Source: Basidiobolus meristosporus CBS 931.73
Lineage: Eukaryota > Fungi > Basidiobolomycota
DNA: 64,000 bases
Direction of reading: 5' to 3'
NCBI GenBank assembly: GCA_002104905.1
Contig: MCFE01000456.1
Span: 8,096-72,095, forward strand
Part shown: positions 21,538 through 44,146 of the stretch, in pieces
Position numbering within the stretch: position 1 is the stretch's first letter
How the letters are laid out: every line of letters starts with the position of its first letter
Made by a program: the position numbers and the translations under genes
The notes under the pieces: generated by a model
What the model saw: only the letters and a program-made list of their open reading frames with translations
What the model was told of the DNA's origin: nothing
Databases searched by the model: none

Positions 21538-24187
21538 TGTTCTTAAAGTCATCCTACATCCTATCCAAATGCCCAACCAATTCCCATTGTGTAATCAAGC
21601 ACTGTACTTTGCTAATTAATAGCTTGAAGATATTTCACCCATCATAATCATATAATTAAACCCTTTTGTGAATCAATGGGATTACTGCTGGCATCGGCCA
21701 CCTTACCAGTAGAGTCATTCCATTTTTGGTTGGGGCATCTGCTGGTGATGGTGCAGAACCAAGTGCCTTCGCCAGCCAGAGATAGAAATGCCATTGCAAA
21801 CTCACAATAGAGTCTTGGTGGGATGTAAATATAAACATACAAACTAATGACCAGTGCAGAGGATTGGCATATATGCAAGGGTTCAGGTGTTCAAGAGCTG
21901 ACGCATGCACAATCCCTGGTAACCAAATTCTTTCCCGGATTTCTATGCAACATAGCAACGGGCAATACACACATCTGGCTGGATCCGTAATGACTAATTG
22001 CACCCTGTGGCATACAGTCACCATTTACATCTAATGTCCAGTGTCTGAAAAATCCCTTGGTCCCAGTCCTATGGCTCAAGAATCAAGGGGTGTACGTCGA
22101 TTTCAAGTATGTATGGCGTCACTTAGAGTGGTACCACCTAGCACACCGACACCAACCTCCTTCCCCTCGAAGCAGAAGAATGCCTCCGCAGTAGTGGTAG
22201 CTCATATATAGATAATCCATTTGATCACGCAGATTAATCCTTATTGCCACGGGGAAGTGCGAGGTGGTGACACAAACCGCCCAAAAATCTCCGTTTCAAA
22301 AACATCCCAAAAAATGGCCTGTTGGTTTGGTGCTGTTCTGTACAGTATGGTGAGAGCAGCTCGTCCTGTGACGTAGATTCCCAACCACCCAACACACACC
22401 GTATCCCACGAATCCCATCTCACCCATCAGCGATTGATAGCATTGATGATAAAGTGACAAGGATCATCACGGATAGATGTACCATTAGATATGTAATTCA
22501 CCACAATGAAACAGCCAGCAAATCCAGACCAATTTCTTCCTCCCACCCCTTCGCACTTCATCGTCGAGTGGCCGCTCGGTCGCAAGCCATGTATTTGTGG
22601 TATGATGGTGTTGGATCCGGAAAGCCTGTGGCCAGCTTGATTATATGGAATCCCCAGAGCCCGCCGGAAGCCAATGGCACCAGGTGGCTTAGTTGATGGG
22701 ACGAGAGGTGGCGGTTGAATCTGATTCAAACAGATCAATGGCCGCCAGTCTCGAATTCCAGCGGCGAAGAATAATGGGAGTGAACCTGTTCCATATAGGA
22801 GATTTAAATATATGGGTAAATAGCGCCCAGGATGCCGCCCAACTCTATTTCAAATACTTCCAACACAGCTGACATATCGAGGCATAACCTGCTTTGGTAG
22901 CTGATCTGGGTGTCCTTTCAATGAGATTCAGAAGTGCGGATTGGAGGGTGAGCAGCCAGGCCAGCAACTGGCCTTTTGATGAAGCGCGTGCGGTGCTCTG
23001 CGGCAAAGGGTGAGGGAAAAGGCACGAGAGATTTGCTTAGGTGCGGAGTCCATGGGCTTCACCGATATGGCATGCTTTCTGGTGGAGGTGCGGCATTGAT
23101 TCTTGGTGGATAGCAGAACCACCGCCCCCTGAATTACTCACTCATGGTTGGCATTTTTGGGGAAATATTCGCTGCATCACAAATTACCATTCCGCTACCT
23201 GCTGGAAGGCTACTAATATATGATCTGCATCCCAATCTTTCTGGTAGCCAATGCTTATTCGGGCGTTGTTTAGGGATACTAACACCACTGATCAAAAGAG
23301 GATTAAGATTGGACGGTTTTGTGCATGGGTACCAGATACATTGGTAAAGCTAGAATTCTCCGGCCACTCTAGCCATATCAGACACTGGGCTCTTTAATTT
23401 CGTACAGCTACGAAACCTTGGGATATGGAGGCTTACATGCGGAGCCCAGGGTAAGCGATTTCCCCGAACACCGGAAGCATAGGCCGCGATACAGCCACCA
23501 ACGGCTGACGTTGTAGCTGCTGACGATCCATTCCCCAGATGCGAAGGTGGCCAGTTGAAGTCACTCGCCATGTTGATCCCCTATTTCCGTAGAGGATTTC
23601 CTGTCCACCCCTTCCATATTTGGCAAACTGGAGACTGTCTCACTCATGTAGTTGCCCTCCCCATTGTAGCACTCCACATGACGCAGAAACCTGCCTGCGA
23701 CCGGGGCCGAATGCTGGTGTTGCAACGAATTGTGATTCAAAGGCCCAAATAAGTGAGCGCACATATAAAAAAGAGGTAGAACCCGATTTCTGAGGAGCCT
23801 AGGGTGTCGGTGTGCGAGACAGTTAAGGACCAAACCTGATGCTCCCCCGATTTGGCACTGAGTGGTTCCAAAAGGCTCGGCCAATGCCTAGAGTGGAGTG
23901 ATAATTCCTAATCCCTAGTTTGCGAGTCTTCATAAGAATCCCTAGCCCCTGGCTGGATAATGATTCGGAGGATTTTCTGGAGTGGAATGAGCTCAGATAG
24001 GTACAGGCCAACCAGGCCGCTGCAAAACAGTTAAAACGGGCAAGTAACAGGCAAATTGGAAATCCAAACAGGTTTACCAATTCCATTTCTCTTCGCCTTG
24101 CGTTTTCGAATCGACCAGCTAGGCTATATTGATCCCGGATTAGAGGCAATCATCGCTCTGTTGTAGTTTAGCTCAAGGCTCGCTGCC

Positions 24188-24517
24188 ATGCACGGCTTGG
24201 GTAAAGGTAAGGGAAGCCCCAAAAAGCGCCCGGTCAGAGTGGACACAATAAAAGGCATCGGCGACATGTCTCTTCGCAAATTGGCCAGGCGAGGTGGGGT
24301 GAAGAGAATATCCAAACCGATCTATCCGCATATCCGCGAGACGATAGTGGAATTCCTCAACGACCTGATCCGTGACACGGTTTCCTACACACAGTACGCA
24401 CACAGATCCATCGTCACTTCCAGCGATGTATGCTACGCTATGAAGAGACGAGGCCACACATTGTACGGGTTTAATCAGACTCAGGATAGGGTTGTTGCCA
24501 ATGACAAGTATTTTTGA
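24188..24517 (+). CDS. Divergent histone H4 variant, intronless, 109 aa
   Basis: H4 histone fold is unambiguous (RKLARRGGVKRIS, FLNDLIRDTVSYT, VTSSDVCYAMKRRGHTLYGF); 43/77 identities to canonical H4 residues 24-100 by manual alignment. Kozak-like GCTGCCATG context. Confidence 0.9.
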   Translation: MHGLGKGKGSPKKRPVRVDTIKGIGDMSLRKLARRGGVKRISKPIYPHIRETIVEFLNDLIRDTVSYTQYAHRSIVTSSDVCYAMKRRGHTLYGFNQTQDRVVANDKYF

Positions 24518-25564
24518 AAGGCTTGCAGGTGAGTGGGTAAGCCCTCTAATAAATTCGCAAGCCCAACAGATAAAGCTAAATGAAATGCATTCAATTATAA
24601 AGTGCCATGGTGGCAGGTTCAAATCGAATAACCTCTGCACAATTAGGTGAATACATTATCGAGCACTCTAGGATTTGCTTTCATTGGGTTACAGCCAAAC
24701 GTATGCAGTCATGATGGTGAACAGCCAGCTCAGTTGACCAGGAAACAGCAAGAATCGCGTAGCCTATGCCCTTAAGTTAGTGGCTATCTAACCTCACCTT
24801 GCGGACACAACAACCCTTGCCCTCAAATCTCCATTGCTTCTTGAACCCAATGCTACTGAGAAATAAGTAAATAAAAGAGACCTGCTTTGTTGCTTACACA
24901 ACGTTCAACCCGTGATTCCACAGCGTGGTGTCTGGGTGGTATCCAGGGCACTAGCTCCGTATCCCAACTGGCTGCTGCACATTGGTCGCGGATGTACTAT
25001 AGATGTATACATTCACCCCAGCAGGCCCAATCACTCCACATCGATATATTACATCGATAAGCCAATTCGGATCGATTACAAGGCAGGCATTCCATCCACT
25101 CCTAGATTCAAGTATTTTCCTAAACCAGTCACTCTATACGGCATTGATCCGATGGGAGAGCAACTCGGTGCTGAGTATGGAGCGCCGGTCCATGGGAAGA
25201 TCGTACAATAAGTGACTTTCAGTTTATTCAAAGTGCAGCAAGTGAGCTAGGTGAGCATAACATCGGTCCGTTCTGAAGGAATAATGAATCCCGAGAAGCC
25301 TACATTTTTGAATGGCTCTGCCAGATAACGAATGTACAAAAAGTTGTCAAGAAAACTCAACTGATCTCCTCTCGTTGGAGAGCAGGGAACGTAACGATAT
25401 CATAGGTGATGAGCGTGTGCTGAAGGATGGGTCGGTTCGTTCAAAGAACTCCTCGCAGCCTTCTCGACGCTGGATCATCAAGCTGCCCAGAATTCATACA
25501 AGAAGAATAAATACATTTTGACTTGAAAGTGACCATTAACCCTTCAGAAGAATATGCCGCTCTA

Positions 25565-34345: not shown

Positions 34346-37300
34346 TGTTGTAAGAGTCTTGGAGATATTGGAAGTGATTTGGAGAACAAGTAGATTATGT
34401 GGTTTTCACTTAATGATTTATTGAATGTAAAAGTAATAATTATACTTTTACCTGGTCTTGGCATTACAAACACATAGAATAGGTTAAGGAAGGTCCCAAG
34501 AGCATGTGTGCAAAGTTTGGGGCTGTTTGGACAACTTTGAGAATTTTCATGTTCTGGGTACCTGGCATTTTGGTGAAAATATTTTAAGTAAATCCCAACA
34601 AGGAATTTGGTCAGTATTCTCTAGGATTTGAAGGTGATGATCTAAGTGACTAAGTTAGGTGAATATTTAGGTGGAAATACAAATTTTTACAACACTCCCA
34701 CTCAGCTAAATGTTCATACTGACTAGTCCTAATTTTGACCTAAGATATTCAAACTTGTCTCTAGCTAAAGGTTTGGTAAATATGTCTGCAATCATTTCAT
34801 CTGTAGGACAGTAAACTAAGCTAACTAAGTTATTCTCTATAGCTTCACGTATGAAATGATATCTAATATCTATGTGCTTGGTTCTAGCATGAAAAGTTGG
34901 ATTTCTACCTAATTGTATACATCCTTGATTATCTTGAAATAAAGTAATAGGCGTTTTTTGACATAGGCCTAAATCTGTAAACAGCTTTCTTAACCACATT
35001 GCTTCTTTTGTAGCTTCACAGGCTGCCATATACTCTGCCTCTGTGGTGGAAAGTGCTACGGTTGGTTGCTTTCTTGAATTCCATGAAATTGCTCCTTTAC
35101 AGTAAAGAAAGGTGTATCCTGTGGTGGATCTTCTGTCTTCCAAATTTTGTCCCCAATCAGCATCAGAGTAACCCACAAGATCCTGTTCTGAATCCTTATA
35201 AGTGTATCTTAAGCAGATATCAGCAGTTCCTTTTAGGTATCTAAAAATCCGCTTAACTGCTGCAATATGATCAGATCCAAAATTCTGATCATGTTGGCTG
35301 ACAACTCCCACTGAATATGAGATATCTGGACGTGTTCCAAGCATGATATACATCAGACTGCTGACCATAGATTGATAAGGAAAGTCAGGGCTTTCAGATG
35401 GCACCAAGCTCTCTTGATTTGGTTGAGTTTTGACCAAGTTAAGGTTTGTCTCCATTGGGGTGGCTGCTGGTTTACAGTCTTCCATTTTGTACTTCTTTAG
35501 TATATCTTGAATATACTTGGATTGGCTTAGGGTAATAATCTGGGTACTTCTGTCTATGGAGAACTTAATCCCTAAGTGGTAACTAAGTTCTCCTAGATCG
35601 GACACCTTGAATTCCTTAGATAGGCTGGATTTAGTCTCTTCCAATGTTTCTAGGTTATTGGCGGCTATAATAAGATCATCCACATATAGAGCTAATAGAA
35701 CTGGATTTGCTCTATCTGGCTTATAGTATATACTATAGTCAGCATAACTTCTTTTGAAACTCAAAGATTCCAAATAAGAATCTATCTTGCAATTCCAGGC
35801 TGTTGGTGATTGTTTGAGACCATATAGTGACTTTTTAAACTTGCAGACCAAATGGGGGTTATCTTGGTCAACATACCCATCAGGCTGGTCCATATACACA
35901 TCCTCATTAAGTTCTCCATTCAAAAATGCAGTTTTTACATCCATTTGATGAATAAAAAACTTATATTTGGCACAATAGCCAATATTAATTTGATGGAGTT
36001 AAACTTGGCTACCAGTGCAAAGGTCTCAGTATAGTCAAGTCCTTTTGTTTGAGAGTATCCTTTGGCTACAAGTCTTGCTTTGTGTCTTTCAATTGTACCA
36101 TCAGCCTTGTATTTTATCTTGAAGACCCATCTGCATCCAATTGATTTTTGGTGGATTGGTAATTTGACTAAGTCCCAAGTTTGATTTTCCATCAGTGCCT
36201 GATATTCCTCAGTCATTGCAGATCTCCAAAACTTTGTCTGAGGGCTATTTAGGGCCTCTTTTACAGTCTGGGATTCATCAATATGGACTGAATAGGCATA
36301 GGCTAAGTTTGTACCCTCATTAATATAGTAATTTGGGCTATTTCTTGTCTGATTTGATCTCCGGGCATTTGATACTGGAATGATCACTTCTGGGATATTC
36401 CTGGGCACTGATTCTGGCTGAACCACAGCTGTAGAGTCCTCTGGAGTGAAGAAATTTTCATTGTTTTGCTCTGATTCAATCCTGACAATTGGTGGACTTG
36501 AGATCAAATTTTTGTCATCATCTGATGTCATTTTTTGTGAAAATTTAGAATTTTCATCAAACAACACATCCCTGGACTTGATCAGCTTCTTTGCTTTGGT
36601 ATTGTAGAGTCTGTATGCCTTACTCTCATTGCAGTAGCCCAAAAATATGCATTTTACACTTTTTGGCTCAAATTTTGACTGATTTCCAGCCAGTTTTTTG
36701 GCATATGCTGTACACCCAAATATTCTTAGATGTTCTGCACTTGGTCTATATCCATACCATGCTTCAAATGGAGTAGAATCACAAAGTATTCTGTTATAAC
36801 TCCTATTTTTAAGATATACAGCAGTGGCAACTGATTCCGCCCAAAAATCATAGGATAATTTTTGATCATGGATCATAGATCTTGCCATATCAATTATTGA
36901 TTTGTTAGCTTGTTCTGCTACTCCATTTTGCTGTGGGGAGTATGGTACAGTAGTCTCTTGCTTTATCCCATGAATTTTGCAGAAGTGGATGAAGAGTTTG
37001 GAGGTATATTCTCCACCATTGTCAGAGCATATTTTCTTGATTTTTTCACCAGTTTCTCTCTCCACCATGGCTTTAAACTCCTTGAACTTAGACAGAGCTT
37101 CTTCCTTTCTCTCCATGAAGTAGACCCATGTGTATCTTGTATAATCATCAATAAAAGTGATTAAATACGTGATCCTGCCTAAGGAAAAATTTTGCATAGG
37201 TCCACACAGATCTGAGTGAATTAGATCTAATTTTTTCTTAGTTTTGATTAACCCAGAGCTCTTGAACGGTTATCTGGCTTGTTTCCCATATATGCAGGCT

Positions 37301-39028
37301 TCGCAGTGCTCCAAATTAGCTGGGGGATCAATTTTCACTCCAGAAATTAGCTGATCTTTGATCATTTTACGCAAATAATCAAAATTGATGTGTCCAAATC
37401 TCCTGTGCCAAAGCATTGGTGTTTCTTCATTTAAGTTACTTATATTGGCTTCCAAATATGATGGATTATAAGTCAACTTGTATAGATTCTGATCTCTGAT
37501 GCCTGAAGCAATATGGGCACCATTTTGATCAGTGATCCTGCATCCAGAATTGTCAAAACTGAAACTGAGTCATTCTGCTGTGGCCTTGCTTACAGAGAGT
37601 AGGTTCTTGGCTATTTCTGGTACATAGAGTACTTCTTTGAAGGTCAGTGTATGGCTTCCTTCACTGCTTCTAAGGTTTACTTGGATAGTTCCTTCTCCCA
37701 CTGCATCAAGTGTTCTATTGTCACCCATGAAAACCTTCTTAATTGGAATTTCTTGATATTGGGTAAAAAGTTCTTTTTGGTGTGTAAAGTGTTGAGAAGC
37801 TCCAGAGTCAATATACCACGTCTGAGAATCCTTGTTTGTGGTCATATTTAGTGCAGATATGAATAGTCTATCTTCAGTTGTTGCAGCATTTCCATATTCA
37901 GGCTTCTTTTGCTGATAATCTCTCTTTTTGAAACACCGGTCTGATGTGTGTCCTTTCCTTTTGCAGTAGTTGCAAAATAGGTTGCTGTCACTTTTGTAGG
38001 GTCTTGGGTACCTCCTTTGTTGGTTATCATTGCTTATTAAAGCATTTTCTTCTTCCTTCTTATTGGTGCTTGATTTTCTTAATTCTTCATCCAGGAGCCT
38101 TCCATATACGTAATTTAAGGTCAAATCTTCAGTTCTGAACTCTAGGGCTGATACAAGGCCCTGAAACTTGTCTGTCAGGCTATTCAGGATGGTAACTATC
38201 ACATCCTCATCAGTAGTTGGTACGCCCACAGATTCCGTCTCATCTACCAGCAGGGTAATTCTGTTAATTAGATTTTTCATTTCTTCTCCTGGCAGCATCT
38301 TTGTAGTAAAGAATTTTCTTCTCAGATACATTTTCTTGGCAGCTGAACATGACTGGTAGGTGTCTTCTAATGCCTTCCAGGCATTCTTTGCTGTTTTTGC
38401 TCTTGAGCATTGAATTAGCAATTTGTCCTTGACATTAAGGCAAATGCAGTTAAAGGCACTTTGTTCTTTCTTCTGGTACTTTAAGGCTTCCTCTCCCACG
38501 TTTTTAGGAGGGCATTCTTCTCCCATGACAATATCCCAAAGGCCTCTTTCTTGTAGCAGCATCTTCATCTTCACCTTCCACACTTGTAGTTAGAGCCATC
38601 CAACTTTTTAGCAGAGGGAAAAATTCCAGTAATAGCAGTAGTAGACATTGCAGAGAGTGACAGCTTGGGGCTCATAACCTGTTGTAAGAGCCTTGGGGAT
38701 ATTGGAAGTGATTTGGAGAACAAGTAGATTATGTGGTTTTCACTTAATGATTTATTGAATGTAAAAGTAGTATTTATACTTTTACCTGGTCCTGGCATTA
38801 CAAGCACGTAGAATAGGTTAAGGAAGGTCCCAAGAACATGTGTGCAAAGTTTGGGGCTGTTTGGACAACTATGAGAATTTTCATGTTCTGGGTACCTGGT
38901 ATTTTGGTGAAAATATTCTAAGTAAATCCCAACAAGGAATTTGGTCAGTATTCTCTAGGATTTGAAGGTGATGATCTAAGTGACTAAGTTAGGTGAATAT
39001 TTAGGTGGAAATACGAATTTTTACAACA
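34346..39028 (-). mobile_element. Full-length Ty1/Copia LTR retrotransposon E1 (4683 bp)
   Basis: 349-bp LTRs at 38680-39028 and 34346-34694 with TG...CA ends and 12 substitutions between them; 5-bp TSD GCCTT at 34341-34345 and 39029-39033; PBS GGTTATGAGCCC at 38668-38679; PPT TGAGTGGGAG; domain order gag-PR-IN-RT-RH. Confidence 0.97.
34706..38648 (-). pseudogene. Copia gag-pol of E1, disrupted
   Basis: Zinc knuckle CNYCKRKGHTSDRC, protease WYIDSGASQH, GAG-pre-integrase LWHRRFGH, IN (HSDLCGP, FIDDYTR, SDNGGEY, QQNGVAE), RT YVDD, RNase H SDADW. Lesions: 1-bp loss near 38585, TGA at 37570, TAA at 37270, 1-bp loss near 35970. Confidence 0.95.
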
Positions 39029-41496: not shown

Positions 41497-44146
41497 TGTT
41501 GTAAAAATTTGTATTTCCACCTAAATATTCACCTAACTTAGTCACTTAGATCATCACCTTCAAATCCTAGAGAATACTGACCAAATTCCTTGTTGGGATT
41601 TACTTAAAATATTTTCACCAAAATGCCAGGTACCCAGAACATGAAAATTCTCAAAGTTGTCCAAACAGCCCCAAACTTTGCACACATGTTCTTGGGACCT
41701 TCCTTAACCTATTCTACGTGCTTGTAATGCCAGGACCATGCAAAAGTATAAATACTACGTTTACATTCAGTAAATCATTAAGTGAAAACCACAAAATCTA
41801 CTTGTTCTCCCAATCACTTCCAATATCTCCAAGACTCTCACAACAGGTTATGAGCTACTGCAATGAGAGTAAGGCATACAGACTCTACAATACCAAAGCA
41901 AAGAAGCTGATCAAGTCCAGGGATGTGTTGTTTGATGAAAATTCAAAATTTTCACAAAAAATGACATCAGATGATGACAAAAACTTGATCTCAAGTCCAC
42001 CAATTGTCAGGATTGAATCAGAGCAAAACAATGAAAGTTTTTTCACTCCAGAGGACTCTACAGCTGTGGTTCAGCCGGAATCAGTGCCCAGGAATATCCC
42101 AGAAGTGATCATTCCAGTATCAAATGCCCGGAGATCAAATCAGACAAGAAATAGCCCAAATTACTATATTAATGAGGGTACAAACTTAGCCTATGCCTAT
42201 TCAGTCCATATTGATGAACCCCAGACTGTAAAAGAGGCCCTAAATAGCCCTCAGACAAAGTTTTGGAGATCTGCAATGACTGAGGAATATCAGGCACTGA
42301 TGGAAAATCAAACTTGGGACTTAGTCAAATTACCAATCCACCAAAAATCAATTGGATGCAGATGGGTCTTCAAGACAAAATACAAGGCTGATGGTACAAT
42401 TGAAAGATACAAAGCAAGACTTGTAGCCAAAGGATACTCTCAAACAAAAGGACTTGACTATACTGAGACCTTTGCACCGGTAGCCAAGTTCAATTCCATC
42501 AGATTAATATTGGCTATTGCAGCCAAATATAAGTTTTTTATTCATCAAATGGATGTAAAAGCTGCATTTTTGAATGGAGAACTTGATGAGGACGTGTATA
42601 TGGACCAGCCTGATGGGTTTGTTGACCAAGATAACCCCCATTTGGTCTGCAAGCTTAAAAAGTCACTATATGGTCTCAAACAATCACCAACAGCCTGGAA
42701 TTGCAAGATAGATTCTTATTTGGAATCTTTGAGTTTCAAAAGGAGTAATGCTGACTATAGTATATACTATAAGCCAGATAGAGCAAATCCAGTTCTATTA
42801 GCTCTATATGTGGATGATCTTATTATAGCCGCCAATAACCTAGAAACATTGGAAGAAACTAAATCCAGCCTATCTAAGGAGTTCAAGATGTCTGATTTAG
42901 GAGAACTTAGTTACTACTTAGGGATTAAGTTCTTCATAGACAGAAGTACCCAGACTATTACCCTAAGCCAATCCAAGTATATTCAAGATATACTAAAGAG
43001 GTACAAAATGGAAGACTGTAAGCCAGCAGCCACCCCAATGGAGACAAACCTTAACTTGGTCAAAACTCAACCAAATCAAGAGAGCTTGGTGCCATCTGAA
43101 AGCCCTGACTTTCCTTATCAATCTATGGTCAGCAGTCTGATGTATATCATGCTTGGAACACGTCCAGATATCTCATATTCAGTGGGAGTTGTCAGCCAAC
43201 ATAATCAGAATTATGGATCTGATCATATTGCAGCAGTTAAGCGGATTTTTATATACCTAAAAGGAACTGCTGATATCTGCTTAAGATACACTTATAAGGA
43301 TTCAGAACAAGATCTTATGGGATACTCTGATGCTGATTGGGGACAAAATTTAGAAGACAGAAGATCCACCACAGGATACACCTTTCGTTACTGTAAAAGA
43401 GCCATTTCATGGAATTCAAGAAAGCAACCAACCGTAGCACTTTCTACTACAGAGGCAGAGTATATGGCAGCCTGTGAAGCTACAAAAGAAGCAATGTGGT
43501 TAAGAAAGCTGTTTACAGATTTAGGCCTATGTCAAAAAACACCTATTACTTTATTTCAAGATAATCAAGGATGTATACAATTAGGTAGAAATCCAACTTT
43601 TCATGCTAGAACCAAGCACATAGATATTAGACATCATTTCATACAAGAAGCTATAGAGAATAACCTAGTTAGCTTAGTTTACTGTCCTATAGATGAAATG
43701 ATTGCAGACATATTTACCAAACCATTAGCTAGAGACAAGTTTGAATATCTTAGGTCAAAATTAGGACTAGTCAGTATGAACATTTAGCTGAGTGGGAGTG
43801 TTGTAAAAATTTGTATTTCCACCTAAATATTCACCTAACTTAGTCACTTAGATCATCACCTTCAAATCCTAGAGAATACTGACCAAATTCCTTGTCGGGA
43901 TTTACTTAGAATATTTTCACCAAAATACCAGGTACCCAGAACATGAAAATTCTCAAAGTTGTCCAAACAGCCCCAAACTCTGCACACATGTTCTTGGGAC
44001 CTTCCTTAACCTATTCTACATGTTTGTAATGCCAAGACCAGGTAAAAGTATAAATACTACTTTTACATTCAATAAACATTAAGTGAAAACCACATAATCT
44101 ACTTGTTCTCCCAATCACTTCCAATATCTCCAAGACTCTTACAACA
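41497..44146 (+). mobile_element. Internally deleted Copia E2 (2650 bp), same family as E1
   Basis: LTRs at 41497-41845 and 43799-44146 (13 substitutions + 1 indel), TSD GTTTT at 41492-41496 and 44147-44151. PBS GGTTATGAGC joins directly to the post-integrase region (TACTGCAATGAG); gag, PR and the IN core are absent. Confidence 0.97.
41850..43787 (+). CDS. Uninterrupted Copia RT-RNase H ORF (645 aa from the PBS ATG)
   Basis: No stops; [58 protein letters not shown] are all present. 19 differences from E1 over the 412-aa RT-RH segment by manual comparison. Confidence 0.85.
   Translation: MSYCNESKAYRLYNTKAKKLIKSRDVLFDENSKFSQKMTSDDDKNLISSPPIVRIESEQNNESFFTPEDSTAVVQPESVPRNIPEVIIPVSNARRSNQTRNSPNYYINEGTNLAYAYSVHIDEPQTVKEALNSPQTKFWRSAMTEEYQALMENQTWDLVKLPIHQKSIGCRWVFKTKYKADGTIERYKARLVAKGYSQTKGLDYTETFAPVAKFNSIRLILAIAAKYKFFIHQMDVKAAFLNGELDEDVYMDQPDGFVDQDNPHLVCKLKKSLYGLKQSPTAWNCKIDSYLESLSFKRSNADYSIYYKPDRANPVLLALYVDDLIIAANNLETLEETKSSLSKEFKMSDLGELSYYLGIKFFIDRSTQTITLSQSKYIQDILKRYKMEDCKPAATPMETNLNLVKTQPNQESLVPSESPDFPYQSMVSSLMYIMLGTRPDISYSVGVVSQHNQNYGSDHIAAVKRIFIYLKGTADICLRYTYKDSEQDLMGYSDADWGQNLEDRRSTTGYTFRYCKRAISWNSRKQPTVALSTTEAEYMAACEATKEAMWLRKLFTDLGLCQKTPITLFQDNQGCIQLGRNPTFHARTKHIDIRHHFIQEAIENNLVSLVYCPIDEMIADIFTKPLARDKFEYLRSKLGLVSMNI

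What the first reader, a model, noticed from the sequence alone, without database searches (positions are those of the whole stretch)
24188..24517. Highly divergent histone H4 variant with truncated N-tail, rewired H2B/H3 contact residues and a C-terminal extension
Established: H4 is among the most conserved eukaryotic proteins and variants are rare. Seen: only 43/77 identity over residues 24-100. The SGRGKGGK start (S1, R3, K5, K8) is missing, with an in-frame stop 8 codons upstream, and the K16-R19 basic patch/K20 region is rewritten (KGSPKKRPVRVD). Core changes include K31D, G48K, L49P, E52P, E53H, K59V, H75Y (a residue of the H4-H2B four-helix bundle), K77H and K79S. The terminal GG is replaced by a 14-aa tail (NQTQDRVVANDKYF). 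The DNA-contacting RKLARRGGVKRIS, Y72, Y88, K91 and TLYGF are kept, which looks like selection rather than decay. Inference: a lineage-specific variant forming unstable or non-canonical nucleosomes, possibly independent of the ascomycete hH4v-type variants.
Basis: partly seen in the sequence, partly recalled or inferred. Interest (0 to 1): 0.75.

Follow-up and report, generated by a model that had tools for sequence, protein, structure and literature searches.

The report
Orphan divergent histone H4 gene, Basidiobolus
The fungus Basidiobolus meristosporus carries an intact extra copy of the normally almost unchangeable histone H4 gene. The copy has lost the regulatory start of its tail and changed nearly half of its core, in a pattern that looks maintained by selection, but nobody has shown that it is expressed or shared with other species.

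Summary
Window 24188-24517 (+) is an intact, intronless 109-codon ORF in Basidiobolus meristosporus CBS 931.73 (contig MCFE01000456.1), already annotated as a gene.

- **What it is:** unambiguously H4-derived (PDB H4, E 3e-26; predicted fold matches only H4 chains). It is only 52/92 identical to canonical H4 and falls below Pfam's threshold.
- **What changed:** So are the missing residues 1-8, the in-frame TAG 8 codons upstream, and the 14-residue C-terminal end.
- **Not plain decay:**
  - 20 of 40 replaced codons need two or more base changes. Neutral simulations give 6.1±2.5, and none of 9000 reached 20.
  - Replacements fall in H4 columns that vary elsewhere.
  - GC by codon position is gene-like.
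  - CpG is undepleted.
  - There is no frameshift.
- **What is open:** no RNA runs were available. No relative closer than canonical H4 exists in about 15 billion proteins. However, neighbouring genes are equally orphaned, because the only other Basidiobolus proteome is 56-60% identical and fragmented. So orthology and dN/dS stay untested.
- **Relation to known variants:** it does not fit the fungal H4E/hH4v family (short N-tail, no introns, other phylum).

Verdict: a probably functional, independently arisen H4 variant (about 0.55); a recently dead relic is not excluded (about 0.3). Moderate interest.

The parts
24188..24517 (+). Complete ORF of the H4-like gene (109 codons plus TGA), with no intron
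   Evidence: Annotated 109-aa gene in GCA_002104905.1. PDB H4 E 3e-26.
24164..24166 (+). In-frame TAG 8 codons upstream of the ATG. It closes the frame where the ancestral start codon would lie.
   Evidence: tblastn with canonical H4 extends in register to 24167.
24167..24187 (+). Seven in-frame codons (FSSRLAA) in register with H4 Met-S1-G2-R3-G4-K5-G6. Only S and R match. Possibly a relic of the lost N-terminus, possibly chance.
   Evidence: inference
24188..24262 (+). Shortened, rewritten N-tail (residues 1-25). It keeps GLGKG (K12) and a KKR remnant of the basic patch. It lacks S1, R3, K5 and K8, and has P in place of K16 and K20.
24263..24451 (+). Histone fold: alpha1 residues 26-35, L1 with the conserved ARRGGVKRIS, alpha2 45-70, L2 (rewritten: H-R-S-I for K-R-K-T), alpha3 78-88
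   Evidence: AF2 model with pLDDT above 90 for residues 30-90. The Foldseek top 50 are all H4 chains.
24458..24472 (+). Conserved C-terminal TLYGF strand. From established knowledge, in canonical H4 this strand pairs with the H2A docking domain and is the part bound by ASF1.
   Evidence: function from established knowledge of H4
24473..24514 (+). 14-residue C-terminal end replacing GG (a net extension of 12 residues), predicted with low confidence or disordered
   Evidence: pLDDT 54-46
24124..24131 (+). TATA-like CTATATTG 57-64 nt upstream of the ATG (consensus match only)
   Evidence: read; not evidence of function
24548..24553 (+). AATAAA 31 nt downstream of the stop codon (consensus match only)
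   Evidence: read; not evidence of function

Best explanation
This is a solitary, intronless paralogue of histone H4 in Basidiobolus meristosporus. It arose by duplication (or retro-copying) of a fungal H4 gene and has since evolved for a long time as a protein-coding gene under relaxed but real constraint. In other words, it is an independently arisen H4 variant.

Shown:
- It is H4-derived and intact.
- Roughly half of its positions are frozen while the rest are saturated with multiple hits.
- It keeps gene-like codon-position composition.

Inferred mechanism (from what is kept and lost, using established knowledge of H4):
- **Pairing and DNA binding.** It still pairs with an H3-type partner through the alpha2/alpha3 hydrophobic core (F61, L62, I66, V70). 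It still binds DNA through alpha1/L1 (R35, R39, R40, K44, R45).
- **Interfaces kept.** It keeps the H2B-facing Y72, Y88, K91, R92 and Y98, and the TLYGF strand used by the H2A docking domain and ASF1. It can therefore probably be chaperoned and placed in nucleosome-like particles.
- **Marks lost.** It cannot carry the R3, K5, K8, K16 or K20 marks.
- **Altered surfaces.** It has a proline-flanked remnant (P-K-K-R-P) of the basic patch that normally engages the acidic patch and ISWI-, Dot1- and Sir3-type factors. It also has a rewritten L2/LRS surface (K77H, K79S, T80I) and a new, floppy C-terminal end.
- **Predicted behaviour.** It would be a replication-independent, modification-poor H4 replacement that alters tail-dependent chromatin folding and reader or remodeller recruitment where it is deposited.
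For: - **H4 identity:** (E 3e-26, all hits H4; Foldseek top 50 all H4, TMt about 0.8; histone fold at pLDDT above 90).
- **Intact and annotated:**
- **Against uniform decay:**
  - 20 of 40 replaced codons need at least 2 base changes from any codon of the canonical residue. Neutral simulations matched for identity give 6.1±2.5, and 0 of 9000 reach 20.
  - Neutral evolution deep enough to give 20 such codons leaves 32% identity (maximum 50% against 56.5% observed) and stays stop-free in only 5% of runs.
  - Replacements fall in columns that vary among 149 other H4-type proteins (Mann-Whitney p 3e-6).
  - There is only one in-frame one-codon insertion and no frameshift over 92 aligned codons.
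  - GC at codon positions 1/2/3 is 0.48/0.41/0.62, like the neighbouring GH20 and PTR2 exons, against 0.48 for intergenic DNA.
  - CpG o/e is 1.02 in the ORF, 0.6-0.7 in the flanks and 0.02-0.12 in the transposon block.
- **No sign of a transposon or retro-insertion scar:**
- **Precedent:** the divergent fungal H4 variant of Neurospora (62% identical to H4) is nucleosomal and functional (bioRxiv 10.64898/2026.08.11.744009).
Against: - No expression evidence: no RNA run was listed.
- No orthologue or paralogue closer than canonical H4 in the word search, the exhaustive HMMER search, viral contigs or metagenome contigs. No hit shares more than 7 of the 40 derived residues. Conservation and dN/dS are therefore untested.
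- Both ends of the ancestral reading frame are gone. The start region is replaced, with a TAG just before it, and the stop is displaced.
- It scores below Pfam's H4-family threshold (23.7 against 28.1 bits).
- Two prolines sit in the first turn of alpha2.
- The open frame by itself is only mildly improbable under neutrality (P 0.12-0.18).
- The column-tolerance test used sequences selected by similarity to the query.
- A gene that was functional for long and died recently would look the same.
Confidence: 0.55

Rival explanations
1. A dead or dying H4 duplicate: an unexpressed relic, perhaps a retro-copy. It was either never functional or lost function recently, and its frame is still open by luck.
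For: - Singleton with no visible orthologue.
- The ancestral start and stop are both lost, with a TAG directly before the position of the old start.
- Solitary, not paired with an H3 gene, and intronless.
- Below the Pfam threshold.
- Stop-free by chance in 12-18% of identity-matched neutral simulations.
- No RNA evidence available.
Against: - The excess of multi-hit codons combined with 56% identity never arises under homogeneous neutral change.
- There is no frameshift.
- Replacements avoid the invariant H4 columns.
- GC3 is gene-like and CpG is not depleted.
- There is no poly(A) tract and there are no target-site duplications.
- These points rule out long neutral decay, but not a recent death.
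Confidence: 0.3
2. The gene model is incomplete. An unrecognised upstream exon, spliced in just before the ATG, restores a longer N-tail, canonical or novel.
For: A pyrimidine-rich stretch with AG dinucleotides (…ctctgttgtagtttag…) lies at 24155-24171, just upstream of the ATG. Fungal H4 and H4E genes often have an intron near the 5' end (PMC10878826).
Against: No GRGK/GKGG-type tail motif is present in any of the six frames within 2.7 kb upstream. tblastn with full-length canonical H4 finds nothing else in the 64-kb window. The annotators' model starts at the same ATG.
Confidence: 0.07
3. It is an orthologue of the described fungal H4E/hH4v family (Pezizomycotina, basal Taphrinomycotina, Glomeromycota), not an independent invention.
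For: By language-model features, the nearest ESM Atlas cluster is an Ascomycota 'Histone H4' cluster of 135-aa proteins that mostly miss the Pfam model, which is probably H4E-type (score 0.95). Both have a C-terminal extension, a degenerate tail and a partly kept basic patch.
Against: - H4E has longer N- and C-tails and a characteristic multi-intron (or, in Glomeromycota, one-intron) structure. This gene has a shorter N-tail and no intron.
- In the exhaustive HMMER search all best hits are canonical-type H4 at 54-57% identity.
- The survey of fungal genomes in PMC10878826 does not list Basidiobolus (0 occurrences).
- That paper itself found that H4 phylogenies do not resolve such questions.
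Confidence: 0.06

Closest known systems
Canonical histone H4 (fungal type, e.g. S. cerevisiae H4 in PDB 1id3 and 4kud)
   Same: Same fold and same register over residues 9-100. The L1 DNA-binding segment, the alpha2/alpha3 hydrophobic core, Y72, Y88, K91, R92, Y98 and the TLYGF strand are conserved. The best PDB scores are to yeast H4.
   Different: Only 56% identical. It lacks residues 1-8. K16 and K20 are replaced by proline. The L2 loop and the start of alpha2 are rewritten. The C-terminal end is 12 residues longer. It is solitary rather than paired with an H3 gene, and it falls below the Pfam threshold.
Fungal H4E / hH4v (Aspergillus hheA, Neurospora H4v; PMC10878826; bioRxiv 10.64898/2026.08.11.744009)
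   Same: A strongly divergent extra H4 beside canonical H4 genes in a filamentous fungus. It has a conserved core, loss of canonical tail modification sites, a partly kept basic patch and a C-terminal extension. It is likely to work in the same general way, as a replication-independent H4 replacement that pairs with H3.
   Different: H4E has a longer N-tail (25 extra residues in Neurospora), a longer C-terminal part (35 residues) and a conserved intron pattern. This gene has a truncated N-tail, only 12 extra C-terminal residues and no intron. It lies in Basidiobolomycota, outside the reported range. It is also more divergent from H4 (56% against 62%).
Other described H4 variants: trypanosome H4V, hominid H4G, rice H4.V
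   Same: Lineage-restricted H4 paralogues.
   Different: According to the preprint, these share about 73-85% identity with canonical H4 and lack C-terminal extensions. The Basidiobolus protein is far more divergent.

Membership tests
Histone H4 (core histone; Pfam PF15511 covers H4) | Sequence similarity to H4 above all other histone-fold families | tested here: met
   phmmer against PDB: 91 hits, the best 60 all H4, E 3e-26, residues 3-96 aligned to H4 9/10-102. The exhaustive search gives 4554 hits, and the best are H4-type.
Histone H4 (core histone; Pfam PF15511 covers H4) | Score above the curated Pfam gathering threshold | tested here: not met
   PF15511 scores 23.7 bits against a cut-off of 28.1.
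Histone H4 (core histone; Pfam PF15511 covers H4) | Histone fold alpha1-L1-alpha2-L2-alpha3 of H4 geometry | tested here: met
   AF2 model: helices at 26-35, 45-70 and 78-88, with pLDDT above 90 for residues 30-90. The Foldseek top 50 are all H4 chains. Caveat: the model was built from an alignment of H4 proteins.
Histone H4 (core histone; Pfam PF15511 covers H4) | Canonical N-tail with S1, R3, K5, K8, K12, K16, K20 and the K16-K20 basic patch | tested here: not met
   Only GLGKG (K12) and K-K-R remain. Residues 1-8 are absent, and K16 and K20 are P.
Histone H4 (core histone; Pfam PF15511 covers H4) | C-terminus ending ...TLYGFGG | tested here: not met
   TLYGF is kept, then 14 other residues follow.
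Histone H4 (core histone; Pfam PF15511 covers H4) | Dimerises with H3 and is incorporated into nucleosomes | not testable with these tools
   Only a monomer prediction is available, and there are no expression or chromatin data.
Fungal H4E / hH4v | N- and C-terminal tails both longer than in canonical H4 | tested here: not met
   The N-tail is shorter: by the alignment the ORF starts at the position of H4 residue 7. The C-end is longer by 12 residues. The criterion comes from PMC10878826.
Fungal H4E / hH4v | Characteristic intron/exon organisation (seven introns in Pezizomycotina, one 5' intron in Glomeromycota) | tested here: not met
   The ORF is colinear with H4 residues 9-100 without interruption.
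Fungal H4E / hH4v | Sequence closer to H4E proteins than to canonical H4 | tested here: inconclusive
   The best HMMER hits are canonical-type H4. The nearest Atlas feature cluster is an Ascomycota H4-like cluster that may be H4E. H4E sequences could not be fetched, because the supplement is not held.
Processed pseudogene / decaying duplicate | Stops, frameshifts, a poly(A) tract or target-site duplications | tested here: not met
   There is no stop or frameshift. There is no A-run after the ORF and no flanking direct repeats.
Processed pseudogene / decaying duplicate | Substitutions spread evenly over sites (neutral pattern; dN/dS about 1) | tested here: not met
   The multi-hit codon excess, the deep neutral run and the column-tolerance test all speak against an even spread. 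A true dN/dS was not computable, because neither an orthologue nor the parental DNA was available.

The most novel reading that the evidence does not exclude
Basidiobolus independently evolved its own highly divergent, modification-poor H4 variant, the most divergent H4 paralogue known outside the Pezizomycotina. It would act with the genus's extra H3 and H2A variants (flagged elsewhere in this scan) in specialised nucleosomes. One possibility is a replication-independent surveillance pathway on foreign or repeated DNA, analogous to SAD-6/ATRX-H4v in Neurospora. The extremely CpG-depleted copia blocks next to this locus would be a natural target.
Probability: 0.12. Interest if true: 0.8.

Novelty: new variant of a known kind. 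Interest (0 to 1): 0.5.

Why it matters
H4 is the most conserved core histone, and very few H4 variants are known. Until 2026 the one fungal family (H4E/H4v) had no function. A preprint now ties it to ATRX-type genome surveillance.

A second, independently arisen and even more divergent H4 paralogue in an early-diverging fungus would have two uses:
- It would show that H4 replacement is a recurrent evolutionary solution.
- It would serve as a natural experiment on which H4 surfaces are dispensable (tail residues 1-8, K16, K20, the L2/LRS surface) and which are not (L1, the H3 and H2B interfaces, the C-terminal strand).

Basidiobolus has very large nuclei, a duplicated genome, 5mC and 6mA, and several other histone variants, so it is a plausible place for specialised chromatin. 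Without expression or conservation data this remains a well-supported candidate and not yet a discovery.

Tried and rejected
- **RNA evidence:** The look-up of sequencing runs (kind rna) listed no run, so read laying could not be used and expression is untested.
- **Orthologue by similarity:** none was closer than canonical H4 in the word-index search, the exhaustive HMMER search, the 90% cluster look-up, viral contigs or metagenome contigs.
- **Orthologue by synteny:**
  - The PTR2 neighbour (searched as its single long exon) led only to paralogous PTR2 arrays in B. meristosporus and B. ranarum. These hold no H4-like sequence.
  - The NUDIX neighbour (searched as one exon ORF) has a B. ranarum homologue on a 1.8-kb contig, too short for synteny.
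  - Spliced neighbour proteins were not joined.
- **dN/dS against the parental gene:** the canonical H4 DNA of B. meristosporus could not be reached with the available collections, so it was replaced by codon-distance simulations.
- **Shared derived residues:** no hit shares more than 7 of 40. P0006, a candidate with a long acidic N-extension, comes from an unrelated assembly.
- **H4E sequences:** the supplement of PMC10878826 is not held, so no direct alignment or tree with H4E was made.
- **Transposon, virus or retro-insertion origin:** rejected. There are no flanking repeats, no poly(A) and no viral relatives.
- **Gene on the other strand:** the 155-aa antisense ORF 24173-24640 and the neighbouring small ORFs have no Pfam match.
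- **Open reading frame as proof of selection:** rejected as insufficient on its own (P 0.12-0.18).

Full report
**Where we are.** The window is from Basidiobolus meristosporus CBS 931.73 (GCA_002104905.1, contig MCFE01000456.1). The exact protein look-up places the ORF on that contig. A neighbouring exon matches proteins named for that strain. NCBI taxonomy puts the species in Basidiobolomycota.

The first half of the window is gene-rich, in this order:
- GH20 hexosaminidase
- an adaptor-complex subunit with clathrin-adaptor domains (Clat_adaptor_s, Adap_comp_sub)
- a PTR2 peptide transporter
- the H4-like gene
- a 210-aa orphan gene on the minus strand
- a DUF4743-NUDIX gene

From about 33 kb onward the window is a block of Ty1/copia retroelements. 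There GC drops to about 0.38 and CpG o/e to 0.02-0.12.

**The observation.** The ORF 24188-24517 (+) is there as described: ATG to TGA, 109 codons, no intron. It is already a called gene of 109 residues in the public annotation.

- phmmer against all PDB chains gives 91 hits. The best 60 are all histone H4, at E 3e-26, with residues 3-96 aligned to H4 residues 9/10-102 and a single one-residue insertion in the tail.
- Identity is 52/92 over H4 residues 9-100.
- The in-frame TAG lies 8 codons upstream, at 24164-24166.
- After F100 there are 14 non-canonical residues.
- The protein is divergent enough to miss Pfam's curated threshold for the family that covers H4 (23.7 against 28.1 bits).
- An AlphaFold2 model built on an alignment of 79 H4-type proteins gives the three histone-fold helices at pLDDT above 90. 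The tail and the C-terminal addition get low confidence. Its 50 best Foldseek matches in PDB are all H4 chains.

**Is there a hidden canonical tail?** No GRGK/GKGG-type motif occurs in any frame within 2.7 kb upstream. tblastn with a full-length canonical H4 finds only this locus in the 64-kb window.

That tblastn alignment runs in register up to 24167, directly after the TAG. The seven codons before the ATG read FSSRLAA against H4 M-S-G-R-G-K-G. Two matches out of seven are compatible with a relic of the ancestral N-terminus or with chance. I treat this as unexplained.

There is an AG-containing pyrimidine-rich stretch just upstream, so a short upstream exon cannot be formally excluded without RNA data.

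**Decay or selection?** I could not compute dN/dS, because neither an orthologue nor the parental gene's DNA was reachable. I therefore asked what homogeneous neutral mutation of a canonical H4 coding sequence would produce. The sequence was back-translated with the codon usage of two exons of this window.

1. When matched to the observed identity, only about 0.28 substitutions per site are needed. The frame then stays free of stops in 12-18% of runs.
2. In the real gene, 20 of the 40 replaced codons are at least two base changes away from any codon of the canonical residue. Identity-matched neutral runs give 6.1±2.5, and none of 9000 reached 20.
3. If neutral change is continued until 20 such codons exist, it takes 0.63 substitutions per site. 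Identity falls to 32% on average (maximum 50% in 2000 runs, observed 56.5%), and only 5% of runs remain stop-free.

So the real sequence combines saturated positions with frozen ones. That is what long evolution under purifying selection on part of the protein produces, and what uniform decay does not.

Further points agree with this:
- The replaced positions are those that vary among 149 other H4-type proteins (entropy 0.41 against 0.12, Mann-Whitney p 3e-6). The caveat is that this set consists of the best hits to the query.
- There is no frameshift over 92 aligned codons.
- GC at codon positions 1/2/3 (0.48/0.41/0.62) resembles the neighbouring genes and not the intergenic 0.48.
- The ORF has CpG o/e 1.02. 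Its flanks have 0.6-0.7 and the transposon block 0.02-0.12.
- No flanking repeats, target-site duplications or poly(A) tract mark it as a recent retro-insertion or transposon passenger.

None of this excludes a gene that was functional for most of its history and died recently.

**Relatives.**
- The word-index search returned only the protein itself plus miscellaneous H4-type proteins at 38-62% identity over the locally aligned parts.
- The exhaustive HMMER search of 1.84 billion cluster representatives returned the protein itself. After it came canonical-type H4 proteins (many fused or extended) at 44-57% identity, mostly 54-57%.
- Its 90% cluster has one member on one contig.
- No hit shares more than 7 of the 40 derived residues.
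- Viral and JGI metagenome contigs hold no relative.

This absence needs a control, and the control weakens it. The two neighbouring genes I searched are also single-member clusters. Their nearest non-self hits are a 62% paralogue and B. ranarum proteins at 56-60%, lying on contigs of 1.4-11 kb.

The databases therefore contain no genome close to CBS 931.73. The one other Basidiobolus proteome is both distant and fragmented. An orthologue at 50% identity or less would not stand out from canonical H4. Synteny could not be tested: the PTR2 hits were paralogous arrays without an H4-like sequence, and the NUDIX contig is 1.8 kb.

'Lineage-specific' is thus neither supported nor refuted. A second strain, B9252, exists in taxonomy and would be the first place to look.

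**Expression.** No RNA run could be listed for this stretch, so no reads were laid. A TATA-like CTATATTG lies 57-64 nt before the ATG, and an AATAAA lies 31 nt after the stop. These are consensus matches only.

**How it probably works (inference from established H4 biology).**

Kept:
- the alpha1/L1 DNA-binding residues (R35, R39, R40, K44, R45, with R36K)
- the hydrophobic alpha2/alpha3 core that makes the handshake with H3 (F61, L62, I66, V70; L58I and V65L are conservative)
- the H2B-facing Y72, Y88, K91, R92 and Y98
- the C-terminal TLYGF strand, which pairs with the H2A docking domain and is held by ASF1
- the GLGKG motif around K12

Lost or changed:
- residues 1-8 (S1, R3, K5, K8)
- K16 and K20 (both proline)
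- R23
- much of alpha1's outer face (T30G, K31D, P32M)
- the first turn of alpha2 (G48K, L49P, E52P, E53H)
- H75Y
- the L2/LRS surface (K77H, K79S, T80I)
- the GG end, replaced by a probably disordered 14-residue stretch

The simplest reading is an H3-pairing, chaperone-competent H4 replacement. It could not carry most tail marks, and it would present an altered basic patch and LRS surface. Where deposited, it would change fibre folding and the recruitment of tail-dependent enzymes.

**Comparison with what is known.**
- A 2024 survey of fungal genomes described H4E (hH4v) throughout Pezizomycotina, in basal Taphrinomycotina and in Glomeromycota. H4E has longer N- and C-tails, lost modification sites, a recognisable basic patch and a characteristic intron pattern. 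Basidiobolus is not mentioned (PMC10878826).
- A 2026 preprint shows that Neurospora H4v is 62% identical to H4, with 25 extra N-terminal and 35 extra C-terminal residues. It is nucleosomal, is deposited by the ATRX orthologue SAD-6, and acts in genome surveillance. The same preprint says other known H4 variants are 73-85% identical to H4.
- The Basidiobolus gene works like these in outline. It fails two defining features of H4E (longer N-tail, intron pattern), lies in another phylum, and is more divergent.
- By language-model features, its nearest Atlas cluster is an Ascomycota H4-like cluster that is probably H4E. This is a lead only.
- I file it as a new variant of a known kind, not as a member of H4E.
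- Earlier notes of this scan report extra H3 variants, one of which a follow-up found conserved in Basidiobolus, and a very divergent H2A in the same genome. I did not test these. They make a specialised histone set in this genus plausible.

**Verdict.**
- Best explanation: an independently arisen, long-maintained H4 variant gene (0.55).
- Main rival: a relic that is now dead (0.3).
- Interest: moderate (0.5). The object is unusual and the sequence evidence for past selection is good, but expression, conservation and chromatin incorporation are all open.

Noticed in passing
window:33000-64000: This is a block of Ty1/copia-type retroelements (gag, integrase, RVT_2 ORFs at 34706-38583 and 41718-43787). 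CpG is extremely depleted (o/e 0.02-0.12 against 0.65-0.82 in the gene-rich half) and GC falls from about 0.46 to about 0.38. That is consistent with methylation-driven or RIP-like C-to-T decay confined to repeats. The boundary lies about 9 kb from the H4-like gene.
   Followed up: partly
window:24173-24640 (-): A 155-aa ORF runs antisense across the whole H4-like ORF. It has no Pfam match, and several ORFs of this length are expected by chance in 64 kb. It is probably meaningless.
   Followed up: partly
window:24167-24187 (+): The seven in-frame codons between the upstream TAG and the ATG (FSSRLAA) sit in exact register with H4 M-S-G-R-G-K-G, and S and R match. This may be a relic of the ancestral N-terminus or chance.
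   Followed up: partly
window:21538-24187: This is a 2.65-kb interval between the PTR2 gene and the H4-like gene, without an annotated gene. No repeat family was found in it, and the two 107-108-aa minus-strand ORFs that I scanned have no Pfam match. That is long for an intergenic spacer in the gene-rich half of this window.
   Followed up: partly
L002, L003 (B. meristosporus), L004 (B. ranarum): PTR2 peptide-transporter genes occur as tandem arrays of two to three copies in both species. One PTR2 protein (P0230) is encoded identically on two B. meristosporus contigs. The B. ranarum homologues of this window's genes are only 56-60% identical, so the two 'Basidiobolus' genomes are deeply diverged, or these are paralogues.
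   Followed up: no
L005:2258-2794 (GCA_004196315.1, SDBT01110273.1): This is a 178-aa H4-type protein with a near-canonical core behind an N-terminal extension of about 90 residues, acidic and serine-rich at its start. It lies beside a deoxynucleoside kinase gene, in an assembly I did not identify.
   Followed up: no
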